Assembly: GCF_947568905.1 (NCBI RefSeq)
Contig: NC_079168.1
Location: 22,196,001 to 22,260,000 of the forward strand
DNA: 64,000 nucleotides
Direction: 5' to 3'
From: Ostrea edulis
Taxonomy: Eukaryota
In this document: in pieces, positions 5,296-25,207 of the stretch
Numbering within the stretch: position 1 is the first letter of the stretch
How the letters are laid out: each line of letters opens with the position of its first letter
Made by a program: the position numbers and the translations under genes
Notes under the pieces: model-generated
The model's input: only the letters and a program-made list of their open reading frames with translations
Databases searched by the model: none
What the model was told of the DNA's origin: nothing

Positions 5296-6227
5296 ATGCT
5301 TCTCTGGATAGTCTTTACCGCGTGTTTTCTGGCGGAAGTGTTTAGCCAACATGGTAAGCAGACATCTGGGTGAAAGAAATCATAATCACATTGCGACTAC
5401 AAAGTATTTTCACGAAATTTGCCTGTTTCTAAATCTGAAAACATACAACATATCAATTAAGTTTCTGAAGCTCTAAATTTGACGCGTCTTTTAAATAAAT
5501 TCTTGATTTTTCCAATAATATTGAGTGCATTTTTTCTCCAGCTGGACACAGTCACAATCATGATCACGGACACAGCGCTCACGGAGGTCACGGTGTTGAC
5601 CCGTGGGACATAAGACCAGTGGACCAAGGACCGGGTTTAGGTGAGGTTCACAGGGATACAAGGTTCACACCTGGGCGGGCGGGCCTACCCGCCCCCAGGA
5701 ACCCATTGAGGATCCCGCCGGGTCCCAGAAATCCATTGAGGATCCCGCCGGGTCCCAGGGGTCCACTGAGGACACATCGTCCCTCACATAGACCACTAGA
5801 CGGGCTGGATACTCTACGTGACCATTTCAACAGAGGCCTGCCAAATCATGGTGTCCCACCCCATAACGACCATCCACTTGTTCCGGATCCTTTCCCAGTT
5901 CTGCCAAATGTACATCCTTACCCAGACCCACATGTACCTGTTAGGCCGTTAGTCGACCCCCACTACCCGATTGATGTAAATCCTAGAAAGTATGGAAAAA
6001 GACCCGACAGGTATGGAAGGCGTTCGAGAAAAAACAAAAAGAACAAGAGAAAGCTGGAAAAGAAAATTAGGAAGGCACTGAAGAAACAGAAAAAGATGCA
6101 AAAGAAGAAGCAAAAGAAGGCACTGAGAAAACATTTAAAGAAGCAAAGAAAGATAAAGAAGGCAAAAATGCGATTAGAAAAACATGCAAGGGAGTTAAGG
6201 AGATTACAAAAAGGATACGGAAAGTAA
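5296..6227 (+). CDS. Gene A: secreted His/Pro-rich protein with Lys-rich basic C-terminal helix, 247 aa; join(5296..5353,5542..6227)
   Basis: Exon 5295-5353 encodes the signal peptide MLLWIVFTACFLAEVFSQH and ends G|gtaagc (phase 1). Acceptor tttttctccag| at 5541 continues in frame (HAGHSHNHDHGHSAHGGHGVDPWDIRP) into the tracked ORF 5619..6227. AATAAA at 6239. Confidence 0.85.
5694..5771 (+). repeat. 30-bp coding tandem repeat (PRNPLRIPPG x2 + PRGPLR) in gene A
   Basis: Units start at 5694 and 5724, with a partial unit at 5754. Confidence 0.9.
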
Positions 6228-10125: not shown

Positions 10126-10218
10126 AGGTCAAAACACCCTCGGCTCTTATATAAACTCAATATAACTCGACGAAATCAATCTTCTTCGTACCTATCTAAG
10201 GGAAAACGCTGAAAAAAG
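10126..10218 (+). promoter_or_regulatory. Promoter (AGGTCAA, ACACCC, TATATAAA) and non-coding first exon of gene B
   Basis: TATATAAA at 10148-10155; donor aag|gtaaga at 10219; acceptor ttctag| at 10382, 2 nt before the ATG. Confidence 0.6.
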
Positions 10219-10384: not shown

Positions 10385-11127
10385 ATGCATGGGGCTTCAG
10401 TGCTAACATCATATTTCCTGTGCATTGTACTTATTTTTGCAGAAGGTAATGTATTTTTTAAAATGTTCTTTTTCTTTCAAAATTTTAAAAAGTAAACAAA
10501 TTAGAATGATTCACACTGCTGCGGATAAGATTTGACCGCGGAGTGTGTTGTACTTTCTAGATCTCTCATTATCAAACCACATCGATGGGAATGCCATATC
10601 TAAAGTCAAGAAGATAAGTAAGTATATTGGTGTTTATATCTTATTTTAAGTTTTCACATACTATTCTGAGACTTTTAAATTTGTTCTAATTGAAATTCTA
10701 TTCATGGCTCAGGGCCGTAAGTAGGGTTCTAAATCAGGGGAGGCAGGGGATTGGGGGCCGCCGATTGACTTTACGACTGAAAATGACACTTTTTAAATCC
10801 CAATTTATCATGTTTGTGTTTCATTTGTACTATGTAAAGAATCGTAATATGGTGTCAAAGACAAAGGTGCTTGTCTTCATTTTAAACATATATCCTATAA
10901 TATAACATTTATATAATTTTATTTTCTTTTTTGCCAAAAAATCAGACGAGGCAGTTGCCTCGTCTGCCTCATCGGCAGTTACGGCCCTGTGGCTGTGGTG
11001 TACTTATTTTTGATTATAACAGATCCATTAGATTACACGCATCCTGTTGGCAGAAATGAAGGTGTTTTCAAACCCCTGTATGAGGAATTAAAAGACAAGG
11101 GAATAGAAAAAATAAGTAAGGAATACT

Positions 11128-11190
<63 letters not shown>

Positions 11191-11846
11191 AAATCATAGA
11201 CTTAATGTTTGAAACAATTCAATTGATATAATTTTAATGAACAAAGCAATCTGACATTTGTTACCTTGGTGTACTTTTAGATTCTGTTGATTTTAAACGT
11301 CCTATTGGTAAAAAGAATAGTCAGAAAGGGGAAGTAAGAACGGCGCTCAGTAAAACAGAATATAAGGGAGATAAAGCTGGTCTCCCTGGCAACCTCAGTC
11401 TAAAGCCATTCAAATTACGAAATGAGGGATTGGATGTACCAAGCACGAGCGAAGTTGGGAAAACCTACGATCCGCCAATATCAGACTTAACAAGACGTAA
11501 ACTTGGCTTAAATGTCCTCGGTATCAACAGTAAACCGAGGAGGAACAAGCAAAACGGACGGCGTTCGAGGAAAAACAGGAGGAGAGGTTTACTAGGGATC
11601 AAAAGGAAACTGCACAGGAGGCTTCGGAGGAAAAAGCTTCAAAGTAGAGCAAAAAATATTCGGAGGAAGAATAAATGGCGGACAGGGCGGAAACTGAAGC
11701 GGAAACATGGACATTTGAGTAGAAAACATGTAGAATTAAAGAGAAAACATAGACGGTTAAGGAGAAAACATAGAAAATTGCAACAGAGACTAAGGAATCT
11801 GGACAGTAAAAACAAAGATCCTAAAATTAACAACCCGATCTTATAA
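10385..11846 (+). CDS. Gene B: secreted Arg/Lys-rich protein with Leu/His heptad C-terminus, 258 aa; join(10385..10445,10561..10617,11023..11115,11281..11846)
   Basis: Signal exon MHGASVLTSYFLCIVLIFAE ends G|gtaatg. Two phase-1/phase-1 exons (57 and 93 nt) have canonical ag|/|gtaag sites. The last exon starts after gtacttttag| at 11281 and is open into the tracked ORF 11430..11846. All junctions keep the frame. Confidence 0.82.
10710..10989. mobile_element. MITE with 11-bp TIR and 5-bp TSD, in an intron of gene B
   Basis: cagggccgtaa ... ttacggccctg; tggct on both sides (10705-10709 and 10990-10994). Confidence 0.8.
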
Positions 11847-12000: not shown

Positions 12001-12097
12001 ACAGGGGGGGGGGGGGGGGGGGGGGGCAAAATGGCAACAAAATGAATTACCGCCAAAGGGTGGTACAACCCCCGTAATCCTCTCTAGATCCACCACT
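12001..12097. mobile_element. Truncated right end of a CAGTGGCGGATC-type MITE
   Basis: Poly-G followed by gtaatcctctctagatccaccact, which resembles the terminus of 29488-29920. Confidence 0.4.
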
Positions 12098-14126
12098 CAC
12101 TTTTTATGTTACGTTAAGTAATTACCTCATCTGCACAGATTCCCAGATTACACACATTTTTAGTGCATACCTTTCCTATAAAGGGTTCATTTAAAGTAAC
12201 TTTCTTAATCCAGTTCACAATTTAGCATATTTTTATCAATTGCTATAGCCCTGTATGACTGTATTTCATCTGTGGTCTGTACTTGTAAATGTAACACAAA
12301 AATGAAGAATTGTTGATTTCTAATATACTGCAATAATAGTATTTGATACATAGTTAATATTTCAATTTAACACAAACAGAATAGATCAGAAATGGTTTAT
12401 CAAACACCGGTCCAAGCTAAGGCTAGATAAATTGTATTATAATTTCTATACTAATATTTTTTTAAATGCTATAAAAATGGACTAAATTCGATAGACTCAT
12501 TTTCTTTCAAAAATCAAAGATAAAAATTAACTATAGATATTATCAATTGATGAACTGCTTTATTCATTATTTACTATGTATACGTACTAATAATGATAAA
12601 ATAAATTTTCTTTTCTTTTCTAAAACACAGACAAAATACATGTGAATCTTATGTACCTGTATAGAATAGTCTATGAAAACACAATTCACACTTATCATCC
12701 TACACTTAAATATCAAACGAAATGTATCCCTTAGGTAGTAAATCAGTGGGGGGGGGGGGATGTTTGGTTTTTAGGGGAGGGATTTCCCACAGTTCCTGTC
12801 GCTCCATCACCCGTCCCTCGATCGCGACATAACACATAACAATTCTATTCAATGAATTAACTGAAATTAAGAGTTAATTCTCATAATCTGTCAGCTTTTA
12901 AAATCGCTTAATCACTGCGTATGAATATTAATCTAACGCTTAAGCGCTCCATTCCGTAAGCAAGTGTGATATAAGAAATATCTGTTTATAATATAAGAGA
13001 TATCTCTTTATTATACTAAAAAGATCTAATATAATCTTATTATTTTTTTTCGAATCAATCCGACAAGGAAAGCAATTATTTCCACTATATTCTCTTTAAA
13101 GAAGTGGACTGGCACAGCCTGAAGGCATCAGCCATGACTGTAGACAATGCCTGTCCACTTCTCTAAAGTGACGTCCTCTGGTTTGTGATTGGTGATACAC
13201 GTGCGGTCCATGTAGCAAATGTTCGCACAATCAAAACGTGTACCTTAGTTTTTTTCCATCCTTCCCTTTATCTATGCAGAGACATGTGGTACACAAATTT
13301 GGTGCAATTACAAATGTTCAGTATCTTTTTTAAGAGAGGGAAGGGGGGGGGGGGGGGGGTCGCGGGTGCTAATTATGGAATACCGCGGTGTTCGATTGGG
13401 TCGCCTAATTCTAAAGGATAGAAGAAAACACCGTTATTAGACATACCCAAGCGCAAAGTTGGTACTCTTTTTAGTGTAAACATCATTGGAGACAACTACA
13501 TGAAGCTTATTATGGGTTATTCATAAAAATAGTTTGCACCATTACGAAGATCTTATGGAATTGTAACCCTCTCCCAAAAACGTCAGAATAAAACAAATCG
13601 GAGAGGGCTACATTATTGCAGCTATGGTTGCAGATATTCATTTGATTATTTGGTACATTACTTTACATAGACAACTTACAGATCAAGTTCGGAGATTGTA
13701 TTTTTGCTGATTTATGGCCCTTAGACAGAAAAATACCACAATACTCAGTTTCCGAACTTTTTTATTATTGTAATGCTCACGGATTTAGTACATTGCTTCA
13801 CCATAACAAGTTACAGATCAAGTTGGAGTTTTGTGAATTTTGAGGAATTCATCTTGGCGAATAAGATGTAATTGATTTGTATGCTTCTTAGCGAAATAAA
13901 GAGGGGTAGTCGTTGGGATAATGGAATATTTTTTCCGACGCTAAAAATTGTCGACGTACATGTATATGTAGGTCGAATTTTTTCTGTCCCGATTACAACT
14001 GATCACACACACACATACACACACACGCGCGCGCGCGCGACGACGACAACTGTATGTTTATTCTGTTGAACACATACACTTGGAAGTTAACTCCTTCAAA
14101 AAAATTGGGACATCAAAGTAATTCCG

Positions 14127-21674: not shown

Positions 21675-22774
21675 ATGTGGAGAATTATCCTGTTGATATA
21701 CTTTCTTATCCTCGTTTCCTGTCAAGGTATCATGGCTACTAGTGTATGACAATTCATCGGGAATAAATGACAGTATCTTCCAAGATATTCATGTAAAACA
21801 AGATAAATAGCTACTGAAGAGTGAAAACATTTCACTGTGATACAAACAGTTTAGTGTAGTCTTTATTTTCAGATCATCTGAAGAAAGATGAAGATCATAA
21901 AGGAGGTGGACGACCAAACAACCGAGAGCGAGGGTGGCTTGATCAGCTGGGTGATTCTCATCCGGGGCGAGCAGTAGGAGACATGGCGACTAAGTTAGAG
22001 AAAGTGGATAACGGAATACAGGACAAATCCGCTTCTATTTTGGACACAAATGAATCCCATAACCAAAAGAGTCGGCAAAACAAATCTAACTCCCAATTTG
22101 GAAGAAGTCGATCGAAGAAAATCAAATCCAAACAGGGAAAAGGTCGACAAGGTAAAACTAGCAATTCCCATCCCGGAAAAGGAAGAGGTCAACAAAATGA
22201 TTTTGACTCTCACCCCGGAAGAGGTCGACAAGATAAATTTGGTGATTCCCATCCCGGGAAAGGAAGAGGTCGACAAGATAAATTCGGTGATTCACATCCC
22301 GGGAAAGGAAGAGGTCGACAAGACAAATTTGGTGATTCCCATCCCGGGAAAGGAAGAGGTCGACAAGACAAATTCAGTGATTCTCATCCCGGGAAAGGAA
22401 GAGGTCGACAAGACAAATTTGGTGATTCCCGTCCCGGGAAAGGAAGAGGTCGACAAGACAAATTCGGTGATTCCCATCCAGGAAAAAGGAGAGGCACACA
22501 GCAGAATAAAGGATCTGACAATACTTACACAGACCAAATCGCTCTGCATTCTATTTTAGGTATACCGGCAAAGACATTGGGAAATAAAGGGATTGCCAAG
22601 AAGACAAACAAACGTGGATGGGAAATGCGTAAACCCGGGGAAAGGGAACGAACGAAAAAGAAAATGAATAGAAAAAGAGGAAGAGGGCACGGCAAAAACA
22701 AAAATGGAAATAAGAGGAACAAGCCGCGGAACAGTGGGCGTGGAAAGAAGTACGGGGGTAGGAAGTGGTTATAA
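21675..22774 (+). CDS. Gene C: secreted Gly/Arg/Lys-rich protein with 15-aa tandem repeats, 317 aa; join(21675..21726,21873..22774)
   Basis: Acceptor ttttag| at 21672; ATG at 21675; signal peptide MWRIILLIYFLILVSCQ ends G|gtatca (phase 1; read-through hits TGA). Acceptor ctttattttcag| at 21872 continues in frame (DHLKKDEDHKGGGRPNNRERGWLDQLGDSHPG) into the tracked ORF 21983..22774. AATAAA at 22830. Confidence 0.83.
22163..22513 (+). repeat. 45-bp coding minisatellite (DSHPGKGRGRQDKFG), 8 units
   Basis: Units start at 22163, 22205, 22244, 22289, 22334, 22379, 22424 and 22469; the first two are 42 and 39 bp. Confidence 0.95.
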
Positions 22775-23485: not shown

Positions 23486-25207
23486 ATGGCGGAAGGCGTA
23501 AACTCCGCGCCGTGTGACTTGTGTCACGGTCAGAACGAAATAAACAGAAAATGTCTGTCCTGTGACGAGTTCATGTGTGAAAACTGCAGCAGGATACATT
23601 TAAAGAGCAGACAGTCACGTGACCATGACATTATAACCATCGCTGATTCTGAAAAGTTGACAGCACTAGTGCCGTACCAGCCCCGCGAAGACGATAATCG
23701 GGAAAACGATTGCGTCAATGAGTTCTGTGACGAGCACGTAGGAGAGAGGTGCATTTTGTTTTGTGTTACTCGTGGGTGCGATTGTCTGGTCTGTCGAGTT
23801 TGTATTTTAGATTATCATCAGGGACACCGCTTCGTTGAAATTGATGATATACTTACGTCATTTAAGCGTCACGAGGCCGAAAGAAGTCGCGATGAAATCG
23901 AAAGCAGCATCCTGCCGTATCTTACTGAGAAGAAAATGCTACTGACTACAGCCAGAGAAAGCGTCTTAAATGACATTCAAAGTAAGAAGGAAACCGTGAA
24001 ACACAGGTACGAGGACCTACGAAAAGAGTTAGATAAACATTATCAAACGACTCTGTCTAGTTTAGCTAATGCTGGCAAAGCCAATATCGAGATCATTGAC
24101 GCGTTAGGAAAGTCTATAGATTTTCACCTAACACGATTGAAAGATATCCTGTCTATTGGCGATAAAAGTGCTGAGAACAGAAATGAGATCGGAGATATAA
24201 AATACGCTCGTAGGTTAGAAAATGACATTGAAAGTACCCCTGAGGTGTTGATACCAAGCTTCAATCGACTCATGTTAAATACGCATGGAAATTGCACAAT
24301 TTCCGATATCTTTGGCGATCTCGAAGAAGTCTTCGAATGCGAACCGGAAGTTATATCAAGGTCACCAACGGGCTTCCCTGAAGTGTCTTCTGTTTGTCCC
24401 GTATCACCATTTGCTGCTTGGCATGGACATTATAAGCATAGAGGAATTCAGCTTTTGGAAGTGGATGAATGTGATCATCTTATTCCCGGTGGCGGATTCG
24501 GAAAATCTGGTGTTTTGAATATGGCTGCTACTCCTGAAGGCGATATATACATGGTGATCTATGGAAGTCATGACGTCATCATGTTAAAAACTGACGGATC
24601 AGTTGAAAAGATTTATGAAACTCGACCATATGTTGCTCTAGGGATTGCAGTTACCAGAAACAGAGACATTTTGCTCTGCCTTGCCGAATCATACCCGAAT
24701 GAAATGAATCCTTCCGGAAAGCGCCGAGTGGCTCGAATAACGAACTTCGGTATTACGCGCCAAATCATTGAAAAAGACACAGAGGGACTCGACATTTTTG
24801 TGTATCCATTCCGTGTAGGCGAAAATATCAATGGTGACATTGGCGTCATTGATCACGTGGGTGACGCGGAAGGAGTACTTGTGACGCTAAATGCGGAAGG
24901 CACCACGAGATTTAAGTATAATGGCTTGGAACAAAACGATGGACAAGTGTGTAATTTGACGGACATAACATTTGACGGAGAGGGGTGCATTCTTATGTCT
25001 GATGTGACTAACCAGTGTATACATATGTTGTCTAAGGACGGGAAATTCCTGCGCTTTATTGATGTGTTCATTTACTATAATACCAAATTGTCCCCCACTA
25101 CTCTTGCTGTTGACTCCTCGGAATGCCTCTGGGTTGGAGGTGTCTCCAAGCATAGATACTTCAATAGAACAGATGCCAATGTTGTACGAGTGAAATATAA
25201 AATGTAA
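23486..25207 (+). CDS. Intronless RING-less TRIM-like protein: two B-box zinc fingers, coiled coil, NHL-type beta-propeller (TRIM2/3/71-like family), 573 aa
   Basis: B-box1 CDLC..CLSCDEFMCENCSRIH..DH; B-box2 CDEH..FC..CDCLVCRVC..H..H; helical region around aa 125-240; propeller blades with NHL-like motifs (YVALGIAV, YPFRVGENINGDIGVID, LTDITFDGEGCILMSD, PTTLAVDSSECLWVG). AATAAA at 25277. Confidence 0.92.
   Translation: MAEGVNSAPCDLCHGQNEINRKCLSCDEFMCENCSRIHLKSRQSRDHDIITIADSEKLTALVPYQPREDDNRENDCVNEFCDEHVGERCILFCVTRGCDCLVCRVCILDYHQGHRFVEIDDILTSFKRHEAERSRDEIESSILPYLTEKKMLLTTARESVLNDIQSKKETVKHRYEDLRKELDKHYQTTLSSLANAGKANIEIIDALGKSIDFHLTRLKDILSIGDKSAENRNEIGDIKYARRLENDIESTPEVLIPSFNRLMLNTHGNCTISDIFGDLEEVFECEPEVISRSPTGFPEVSSVCPVSPFAAWHGHYKHRGIQLLEVDECDHLIPGGGFGKSGVLNMAATPEGDIYMVIYGSHDVIMLKTDGSVEKIYETRPYVALGIAVTRNRDILLCLAESYPNEMNPSGKRRVARITNFGITRQIIEKDTEGLDIFVYPFRVGENINGDIGVIDHVGDAEGVLVTLNAEGTTRFKYNGLEQNDGQVCNLTDITFDGEGCILMSDVTNQCIHMLSKDGKFLRFIDVFIYYNTKLSPTTLAVDSSECLWVGGVSKHRYFNRTDANVVRVKYKM

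What the first reader, a model, noticed from the sequence alone, without database searches (positions are those of the whole stretch)
11694..11801. His/Leu zipper in gene B: a candidate pH- or metal-switched coiled coil
Seen: LKRKHGH-LSRKHVE-LKRKHRR-LRRKHRK-LQQRLRN-L. Leu occurs at exact 21-nt spacing (11694, 11715, 11736, 11757, 11778, 11799), His lies four residues after Leu in four successive heptads, and Leu replaces His in the fifth. Known: positions four residues apart correspond to the d and next a core positions of a heptad, and designed coiled coils with core His fold only on binding Zn/Cu/Ni or at higher pH. Inference: a natural secreted zipper that stays unfolded in acidic granules (strong Arg/Lys repulsion, protonated His) and assembles in seawater or with metals or polyanions, as in mussel byssus His chemistry. 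The end of gene A (LEKHARE-LRRLQK) may be a remnant of the same unit.
Basis: partly seen in the sequence, partly recalled or inferred. Interest (0 to 1): 0.7.

Follow-up and report, generated by a model that had tools for sequence, protein, structure and literature searches.

The report
Repeat-made His/Leu heptads in oyster tail
The exact His/Leu heptads are real, but they are a 21-base tandem repeat inside an Ostrea-specific extension of a very basic helical tail on a secreted orphan oyster protein, so a polyanion-binding helix is more likely than a conserved pH- or metal-switched zipper.

Summary
Window 11694-11801 (+) encodes four LKRKHxx-type heptads, then LQQRLRN-L. Leu recurs every 21 nt six times and His sits four residues after Leu four times.

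The segment lies in the last exon of Ostrea edulis LOC125651555, a 258-aa protein with a signal peptide. Spliced transcript contigs confirm the gene model.

- **Origin.** The heptads are a 21-nt tandem DNA repeat (3.7 copies), so the four His descend from one duplicated codon.
- **Conservation.** The syntenic orthologs in Saccostrea cucullata and S. echinata end about 58 residues earlier. They lack the whole segment and have no His in their tails. Only a shorter basic amphipathic helix is shared.
- **Structure.** AlphaFold2 predicts one continuous helix, residues 167-248, at pLDDT 84-98. The Saccostrea helix is only 30 residues.
- **Charge.** With Leu at d and His at a, positions e and g are almost all Lys/Arg. 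No g-e' pair is attractive, and net charge is +16 to +21. Unaided self-association is unlikely.

My best reading is a lineage-specific, repeat-expanded polycationic helix that folds on polyanionic partners. The pH/metal switch is untested and has no support from conservation. No function is known for the family. Interest is modest.

The parts
10385..10445 (+). Gene B (O. edulis LOC125651555) first coding exon: start codon plus a signal-peptide-like hydrophobic stretch; phase-1 donor
   Evidence: Sequence read. The spliced model reproduces RefSeq protein P0001 exactly. Joints 10216/10381 and 10443/10559 appear in spliced contigs of runs X5 and X6.
10561..10617 (+). Gene B coding exon 2 (57 nt, phase 1 to 1)
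   Evidence: Joints 10443/10559 and 10617/11023 with GT..AG ends in X5 and X6; model check.
11023..11115 (+). Gene B coding exon 3 (93 nt, phase 1 to 1)
   Evidence: Contig pieces 11023-11115 joined to 11281 onward in X5 and X6 (table 8); model check.
11281..11846 (+). Gene B terminal exon, including the stop codon at 11844-11846. It encodes a disordered middle part and the polycationic tail.
11568..11669 (+). Conserved basic amphipathic helix (residues 167-200). This is the only part of the tail shared with the Saccostrea orthologs.
   Evidence: Alignments (invariant R, N, I, R, K, L, R, R columns). AF2 predicts a helix in both species.
11670..11843 (+). Ostrea-specific C-terminal extension (residues 201-258) that holds the heptads
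   Evidence: Fully gapped in S. cucullata and S. echinata. At protein level it resembles the conserved helix: score 61 against 38 +/- 6 for shuffles, reached by 12 of 5000. The DNA-level score was not above shuffles.
11685..11693 (+). Gly-Arg-Lys immediately before the first zipper Leu; a possible dibasic cleavage or amidation site
   Evidence: Motif scan; its meaning is inference only.
11694..11801 (+). The reported His/Leu heptad segment (residues 209-244): d = L six times, a = H,H,H,H,L
11703..11779 (+). 21-nt tandem DNA repeat, 3.7 copies, 73% matches; it generates heptads 1-4
   Evidence: Tandem Repeats Finder; direct-repeat family D1 with 21-nt spacing.
11754..11765 (+). Arg-Leu-Arg-Arg (residues 229-232), a furin-type R-x-R-R motif inside the zipper. 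A second copy lies at residues 184-187 in the conserved helix.
   Evidence: Motif scan; cleavage is not shown.
5296..5353 (+). Gene A signal-peptide exon (58 nt of coding sequence, phase-1 donor), the same layout as gene B
   Evidence: Sequence read. The family members P0006-P0008 have matching N-termini.
5542..6227 (+). Gene A terminal exon: His-rich start, Pro-rich repeats and a Lys-rich tail. It is a paralog of gene B through the shared layout and the GRRSRKN block at 6015-6036.

Best explanation
The segment is part of a roughly 58-residue extension found only in Ostrea. It lengthens a conserved, very basic C-terminal amphipathic helix on a small secreted protein known only from oysters (O. 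edulis LOC125651555). The extension resembles the neighbouring conserved helix at protein level, and a 21-nt tandem duplication then lengthened it. That duplication is why Leu and His fall at exact 7-residue spacing. I infer that the tail works as a long polycationic helix. It would be poorly ordered alone because of charge repulsion. It would fold and dock electrostatically on polyanionic partners such as sulfated or acidic polysaccharides, acidic matrix proteins, nucleic acids or microbial surfaces. The narrow Leu stripe would supply the only hydrophobic contact line. The His residues add about five titratable charges between pH 5 and 8, but they are not a conserved or required core. Shown here: the gene model, transcription, repeat origin, absence in orthologs, helix prediction and charge pattern. 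Inferred: the folding-on-binding mechanism, the partner and the biological role.
For: The gene is real and spliced as modelled. A 21-nt DNA repeat underlies heptads 1-4. Tandem repeats of other periods occur in the sister genes (30 and 12 nt in gene A, 45 nt in gene C), so repeat expansion is a habit of this cluster and 21 nt is one period among several. The gene order A, B, C, then a 573-aa B-box gene is conserved in S. cucullata, which makes P0003 the positional ortholog. P0003 and P0004 lack residues 201-258 and have no His in their tails. AF2 gives one helix at 167-248 with pLDDT 84-98 and a disordered rest. The S. cucullata helix spans only 162-191. In the heptad register e is K,S,K,R,Q and g is K,K,K,K,R. 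Net charge is +16 to +21, mean Eisenberg hydrophobicity is -0.90, and 7 Leu plus 1 Val of 36 residues are hydrophobic. In bZIP data, repulsive Arg-Arg and Arg-Lys g-e' pairs mark non-binders (PMC4335062). The six Leu use three different codons while the b, c and e positions vary, which suggests the Leu stripe is maintained. Copy number is the same in the window, in the X5 contig and in the X1 contig, with no gaps across the repeat.
Against: No binding partner, tissue or secretion has been shown. High AF2 confidence for an isolated helix does not show the helix exists in solution, and it is equally compatible with a coiled coil. The perfect Leu heptad continues one unit beyond the DNA repeat (LQQRLRN-L), with Leu at both a and d. 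That is what a real coiled-coil trigger would look like. Strict Cardin-Weintraub heparin-binding motifs are not present. Only two Saccostrea orthologs could be compared, and no other Ostrea species was available.
Confidence: 0.5

Rival explanations
1. One reading: a homomeric His-a / Leu-d coiled coil. It would stay unfolded when His is protonated and assemble at seawater pH or when Zn, Cu or Ni bridge the core His layers.
For: The register is correct (a = H four times, d = L six times). The helix is predicted with high confidence. Designed three-stranded coiled coils with core His do bind Zn and Co (abstract of PMC13262294 listed). His spaced seven residues apart cannot chelate one metal within a single helix, so any metal site would have to lie between helices, as the model requires (inference from helix geometry).
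Against: The segment and its His are absent from both Saccostrea orthologs. All four His are copies of one codon. There are no attractive g-e' pairs and two repulsive ones. Net charge is +16 even with neutral His, and bound metal ions would add more positive charge (PMC4335062). Only one heptad has hydrophobic residues at both a and d. Designed switch peptides place His within otherwise fully hydrophobic cores (my own knowledge, not checked here).
Confidence: 0.1
2. Precursor model: the tail is cut by proprotein convertases into free cationic peptides of host-defence or signalling type. The heptads would then simply be part of a released C-terminal peptide of about 50 residues.
For: G-R-K sits directly before the first zipper Leu and G-R-R before the conserved helix. 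R-L-R-R furin-type motifs lie at residues 184-187 and 229-232. S. cucullata has F-G-K-R near its C-terminus. Gene A keeps Y-G-K/R-basic motifs across the family. The protein enters the secretory route, where such enzymes act (signal peptide).
Against: In a sequence that is about 47% Lys/Arg, dibasic and R-x-x-R motifs arise by chance. The G-dibasic site is not kept in S. echinata (F-V-K-R). Hydrophobic content of 22% and mean hydrophobicity of -0.90 are low for membrane-active helical peptides. No peptide evidence exists.
Confidence: 0.15
3. Neutral model: the heptads are a tolerated microsatellite-like expansion in a fast-evolving low-complexity tail. They would have no role beyond adding bulk positive charge.
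For: The segment originates from a tandem repeat. The cluster is full of repeats of various periods. Gene B is only 27-33% identical to its Saccostrea orthologs, against 51% for gene A. Six non-synonymous and six synonymous differences plus a 3-nt deletion separate the window from the organism-A transcripts, and a Q-to-K change occurs in heptad 5 in run X1.
Against: Leu is kept at all six d positions through three synonymous codons, and the heptad phase continues past the repeat. The zipper is identical and copy number stable in the X5 transcript, while the 110 nt upstream carry four differences.
Confidence: 0.2

Closest known systems
bZIP-type leucine zipper (Leu every seventh residue at position d)
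   Same: Six Leu at exact heptad spacing next to a strongly basic stretch. As in bZIPs, the charges at e and g would decide partner choice.
   Different: There is no Pfam bZIP hit even at E up to 1. The protein has a signal peptide rather than a nuclear protein layout. Position a is His in four heptads, and e/g are all basic, which in bZIP data marks non-binding pairs (PMC4335062).
Designed metal- or pH-responsive coiled coils with core His (three-stranded His3 metallocoiled coils)
   Same: His occupies a core heptad position and could form interhelical layers that bind metal.
   Different: The designed peptides surround a single His layer with fully hydrophobic a/d layers and balanced e/g salt bridges (my own knowledge; the class is documented by PMC13262294). 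Here four successive a layers are His, and the helix carries +16 net charge with no acidic e/g residues.
Lysine-rich matrix proteins (KRMP) of pearl oysters
   Same: Both are small secreted bivalve proteins with a strongly basic domain. In KRMP-3 the Lys-rich region controls CaCO3 crystal growth in vitro (PMC4498902). This is a precedent for a secreted polycationic domain acting on anionic mineral or matrix surfaces.
   Different: No sequence similarity was detected in any search. Gene B has no Gly/Tyr-rich chitin-binding domain. Presence in mantle or shell has not been shown.
Cationic amphipathic alpha-helical host-defence peptides, including His-rich pH-dependent ones
   Same: Secreted precursor, high positive charge, predicted amphipathic helix and titratable His.
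   Different: Only 22% of residues are hydrophobic and mean hydrophobicity is -0.90, much more polar than typical membrane-active helices (my own knowledge). No homology was found and release of a peptide is not shown.
Mussel byssal His-rich metal-crosslinking domains
   Same: His in a secreted bivalve protein.
   Different: His makes up 5 of 36 residues here. The segment is helical and Lys/Arg-dominated, and no sequence relation to any other family was found. The analogy rests on the presence of His alone.

Membership tests
Canonical homomeric coiled coil | Hydrophobic residues at both a and d over several heptads | tested here: not met
   d is Leu six times, but a is His in four of five heptads. 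Only LQQRLRN has Leu at both.
Canonical homomeric coiled coil | Neutral or attractive g-e' charge pairs | tested here: not met
   The g-e' pairs are K-S, K-K, K-R and K-Q. None is attractive and two are repulsive. Repulsive pairs mark non-binders in bZIPs (PMC4335062).
Canonical homomeric coiled coil | Continuous alpha-helix | tested here: met
   AF2 predicts a helix at residues 167-248 with pLDDT 84-98. This is a monomer prediction only.
Canonical homomeric coiled coil | Oligomer formation | not testable with these tools
   No multimer prediction or biophysics was available.
bZIP transcription factor | Match to the bZIP_1 or bZIP_2 profile, including the basic DNA-contact region | tested here: not met
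   The Pfam scan at E up to 1 returned only ZapB at E 0.88, far below its cut-off.
bZIP transcription factor | L-x6-L-x6-L-x6-L pattern | tested here: met
   Six Leu at period 7. This pattern alone is known to be non-specific (my own knowledge).
Metal- or pH-switched His-core coiled coil | His at core positions | tested here: met
   His occupies a in four successive heptads.
   The segment is absent and no His occurs in the tails of S. cucullata and S. echinata. It is identical only in near-identical Ostrea transcripts.
Metal- or pH-switched His-core coiled coil | Metal- or pH-dependent folding | not testable with these tools
   This needs CD, AUC or ITC on the peptide.
Cardin-Weintraub heparin-binding motif | XBBXBX or XBBBXXBX consensus | tested here: not met
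   The regex scan of the tail found no strict match, because basic residues are too dense to leave the X positions non-basic.
KRMP-type basic shell matrix protein | Signal peptide plus Lys-rich basic domain plus Gly/Tyr-rich domain; presence in shell matrix | tested here: inconclusive
   A signal peptide and a basic domain are present. There is no Gly/Tyr domain in gene B and no detectable homology. Shell localisation cannot be tested here (family definition from PMC4498902).
Cationic amphipathic helical antimicrobial peptide | Amphipathic helix with a substantial hydrophobic face | tested here: not met
   The hydrophobic moment is 0.48-0.57, but mean hydrophobicity is -0.90 and only 8 of 36 residues are hydrophobic.

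The most novel reading that the evidence does not exclude
The Ostrea extension could be a recently evolved natural conditional zipper. Its His-a / Leu-d helices would be kept apart by charge until a polyanion neutralises them, with or without metal ions bridging the His layers. Examples of such polyanions are a phosphorylated or sulfated matrix or cement component. The helices would then bundle. This would give a secreted, trigger-dependent assembly or coacervation module specific to flat oysters.
Probability: 0.1. Interest if true: 0.65.

Novelty: new member of a known kind. Interest (0 to 1): 0.28.

Why it matters
If the switch idea were right, this would be a rare natural counterpart of designed His-core coiled coils and a lead for stimulus-responsive biomaterials. 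The evidence points to something more ordinary. A tandem-repeat expansion roughly tripled the length of a polycationic helix in one oyster lineage. This shows how apparently designed heptad patterns can arise from a single 21-nt duplication. The more durable result is the context. A syntenic cluster of three secreted, polycationic, repeat-rich genes, found so far only in oysters, is conserved between Ostrea and Saccostrea. Gene A's family also appears in further unnamed assemblies. The cluster has no assigned function and would be worth a tissue-expression and proteomic look.

Tried and rejected
- **Family and structure searches.** The Pfam scan of genes A, B and C found nothing significant. 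PDB sequence searches of the tail gave only chance-level hits at E 0.5 or worse. One search used too short a piece by my mistake.
- **ESM Atlas.** Feature searches of the whole protein and of the tail gave no usable hit.
- **Homolog searches.** The word-based search with the last exon found only the protein itself. The exhaustive HMMER search found two other proteins at E up to 0.001. One is the S. cucullata ortholog. The other, P0002, is an ENA repeat protein matching only residues 90-119, which I judged irrelevant to the tail.
- **Paralog comparison.** BLASTP of gene B against genes A and C was not significant. The paralogy rests on gene layout, position and one 22-nt block.
- **Internal duplication.** The DNA-level test of the extension against the conserved helix was not significant: 572 of 2000 codon shuffles scored as well. 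Only the protein-level score stands out.
- **Heparin-binding motif.** The strict Cardin-Weintraub motif was tested and not met.
- **Literature.** A search for the gene identifier found nothing. A search for oyster His-rich or Lys-rich secreted proteins found only unrelated shell-matrix papers.
- **Expression level and tissue.** The runs are coded and held as contigs, so neither could be read.
- **Earlier notes of this scan.** A word search returned nothing.

Full report
**What is at the coordinates.** Window 11283-11846 (+) is one open frame ending in a stop codon at 11844-11846. A word-index protein search matched it at 100% identity to a 258-aa RefSeq protein, "uncharacterized protein LOC125651555 [Ostrea edulis]" (P0001). 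The window is therefore European flat oyster DNA.

I built the gene model by eye from the splice signals:
- a non-coding first exon ending at 10216;
- coding exons 10385-10445, 10561-10617, 11023-11115 and 11281-11846, with every coding intron in phase 1.

This model translates exactly to P0001. Spliced contigs in two public runs (X5 and X6, 95-99% identical) carry the joints 10216/10381, 10443/10559 and 10617/11023 and the piece 11023-11115 joined to 11281. The gene is therefore transcribed and spliced as modelled. The first coding exon encodes a hydrophobic N-terminus of signal-peptide type. The orthologs and the paralog gene A have the same kind of N-terminus.

**The observation.** Residues 209-244 read as four heptads of the form L-(K/S/R)-R-K-H-x-x, then LQQRLRN, then L.
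- The Leu codons sit at 11694, 11715, 11736, 11757, 11778 and 11799.
- A period-7 Leu run of 6 or more occurs in 29 of 200,000 shuffles of the 94-residue tail.
- A period-7 His run of 4 or more occurs in 64 of 200,000 shuffles.
- No other period from 2 to 12 gives a run longer than 2.

So the pattern is real and non-random.

**Why it is so regular.** Tandem Repeats Finder reports a 21-nt repeat at 11703-11779 with 3.7 copies and 73% matches. The direct-repeat tool finds the same array with 21-nt spacing. All four His are CAT, each preceded by AAA. The "four successive His" are thus one codon copied, not four independent placements.

The sister genes carry tandem repeats of other periods: 30 nt and 12 nt in gene A, and 45 nt in gene C. 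A 21-nt period is one outcome among several in a cluster prone to repeats.

Two details argue for some constraint:
- The six Leu use three synonymous codons, while the b, c and e positions vary.
- The Leu phase continues one heptad past the DNA repeat.

**Orthologs.** The exhaustive HMMER search returned, besides the query, a 195-aa Saccostrea cucullata protein (P0003, E 3e-8 over residues 6-191) and an unrelated repeat protein. A profile search added a 196-aa S. echinata protein (P0004).

The S. cucullata contig carries genes of 203, 195 and 298 aa followed by a 573-aa B-box gene. That is the same order and sizes as genes A, B and C and the 573-aa B-box ORF at 23486-25207 in this window. P0003 is therefore the positional ortholog.

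In the alignments, the shared part of the tail is one basic amphipathic helix. O. edulis residues about 165-200 align with invariant R, N, I, R, K, L, R, R columns. Both Saccostrea proteins stop there. O. edulis residues 201-258, including every heptad, align to gaps. Neither Saccostrea tail contains a His. The one His of the shared helix (KLHRRL) is Gln or Leu in Saccostrea.

The extension resembles the shared helix at protein level (IKRKLHRRLRRK..KLQSR against LKRK-HRRLRRKHRKLQQR). The score is 61 against 38 +/- 6 for shuffles, reached by 12 of 5000. The DNA-level score is not above shuffles. An old internal duplication is possible but not shown.

**Structure and physics.** AlphaFold2 with the three-sequence alignment predicts a single helix at residues 167-248 with block pLDDT 84-98. 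Nearly everything between the signal peptide and the tail is below pLDDT 50. For S. cucullata the corresponding helix is residues 162-191 only. The conserved architecture is a signal peptide, a disordered middle and a cationic C-terminal helix. Ostrea has roughly tripled the helix.

With Leu set to d, the register is as follows:

| Position | Residues over the five full heptads (209-243) |
|---|---|
| a | H, H, H, H, L |
| d | L, L, L, L, L (L244 starts a sixth) |
| e | K, S, K, R, Q |
| g | K, K, K, K, R |

- The g-e' pairs of a parallel homodimer would be K-S, K-K, K-R and K-Q.
- The 36-mer has 17 Lys/Arg and 1 Glu. Its calculated charge is +16 at pH 8.1 and +21 at pH 5.
- Mean Eisenberg hydrophobicity is -0.90 and the hydrophobic moment is 0.48-0.57.
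- In systematic bZIP data, repulsive Arg-Arg and Arg-Lys g-e' pairs are enriched among non-binders (PMC4335062).

A homomeric zipper that assembles merely because His deprotonates is therefore unlikely. Losing about five charges still leaves +16 per strand, and bound metal cations would add charge. Something anionic would have to neutralise the helices.

His residues seven apart on one helix cannot chelate the same ion. Any metal site would have to lie between helices (inference from helix geometry).

**Most likely mechanism.** I read the segment as a repeat-generated lengthening of a polycationic amphipathic helix that acts by electrostatic docking on polyanions. Such partners are abundant outside oyster cells: sulfated polysaccharides and mucus, acidic shell-matrix or cement proteins, microbial envelopes and nucleic acids.
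- The helix would fold on binding.
- The Leu stripe would give a narrow contact line.
- His would give mild pH tuning.

The gene model, transcription, repeat origin, absence from orthologs, helix prediction and charge pattern are shown here. The partner and the biological role are inferred. I give this reading about 0.5.

**Rivals.**
- **Processing into free cationic peptides, about 0.15.** G-R-K lies immediately before L209, G-R-R before the conserved helix, and R-L-R-R at 184-187 and 229-232. Such motifs are expected by chance at this Lys/Arg density, and the G-dibasic site is not kept in S. echinata.
- **Neutral, tolerated expansion, about 0.2.** Gene B evolves fast. It is 27-33% identical to its Saccostrea orthologs, against 51% for gene A. 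Six non-synonymous and six synonymous differences plus a 3-nt deletion separate it from the organism-A transcripts, and run X1 has a Q-to-K change in heptad 5.

**Comparison with known systems.** No family membership can be claimed.
- Pfam gives no hit for gene B above noise, including bZIP.
- PDB sequence searches give only chance-level matches.
- ESM Atlas searches give nothing usable.

The segment works most like other secreted polybasic domains of bivalves. One example is the Lys-rich region of pearl-oyster KRMP-3, which acts on CaCO3 growth in vitro (PMC4498902). There is no homology, and gene B lacks the Gly/Tyr domain of KRMPs.

It shares the Leu heptad with bZIP zippers and the core His with designed metallocoiled coils (PMC13262294, abstract). 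It fails the defining features of both, as listed in the membership table.

**Earlier notes of this scan.** The conserved PRKYG(K/G) motif and the terminal YGK(RY) motifs across the gene A family are compatible with the second note. I did not test processing.

**Verdict.** This is a new, lineage-specific member of a familiar kind, the repeat-expanded polycationic tails of fast-evolving secreted mollusc proteins. Interest is 0.28.

Noticed in passing
window 5296-6227 (gene A); proteins P0005-P0011: Gene A belongs to a wider family of secreted proteins of about 180-240 aa. Only the Ostrea and Saccostrea members carry a species name. The family has a conserved His-rich start (H-G-H-D-H..H-G-G-H-G-V-D-P-W/F), a conserved P-R-K-Y-G-(K/G) site, a Lys-rich helical tail (L-R-K-N-K-R-K-L-Q-K-K-I-R-K) and a Y-G-K-(R-Y) C-terminus. 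It is much better conserved than gene B (51% against 27-33% between Ostrea and Saccostrea). One RefSeq member is misleadingly named 'phosphatase 1 regulatory subunit 10-like'.
   Followed up: partly
window 21983-22774 and 22050-22559; L001 17779-18567: Gene C's 45-nt repeat array (6.2 copies, 92% matches) is open in two frames in O. edulis (ORFs of 263 and 169 aa). In S. cucullata one long ORF passes from the S-H-P-G-K-G type frame into the S-I-H-I-L-V-E-V-D-K type frame. That second frame resembles the alternative frame in O. edulis. The repeat may be read in different frames in the two genera.
   Followed up: no
window 5083-25207; L001 6612-20903: The gene order A, B, C followed by a single-exon 573-aa B-box ORF (B-box zinc finger hit, E 8.6e-7) is conserved between O. 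edulis and S. cucullata. The B-box product length is identical in both.
   Followed up: partly
window 10710-10990 (intron 3 of gene B): Small RNA-library contigs from runs X1 and X2 lie on this intronic stretch on both strands. They run on into unrelated sequence at both ends. It looks like a dispersed repeat or transposable element transcribed elsewhere. A 24-nt palindrome lies at 10943-10966.
   Followed up: no
window 11847 onward: The X5 transcript contig matches up to 11847, one base past the stop codon. It then continues for 47 letters unlike the window. This suggests a structural difference in the 3' UTR between this assembly and organism A.
   Followed up: no
P0002 (ENA contig, 498 aa) against gene B residues 90-119 (window about 11340-11430): An unnamed metagenome-assembly protein consists of eight or more tandem repeats of about 55 aa (..E-T-T-N-K-G-E-T-V-G-L-P-G-E-V-S..). 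These match the K-G-D-K-A-G-L-P-G-N-L-S region of gene B at E 2e-13. Its origin and meaning are unknown.
   Followed up: no
window 11130-11186 and 12004-12026: (TA)28 lies in gene B's last intron, and a 23-base poly-G run lies about 160 nt downstream of the stop codon. Another 17-base poly-G lies at 13343-13359.
   Followed up: no
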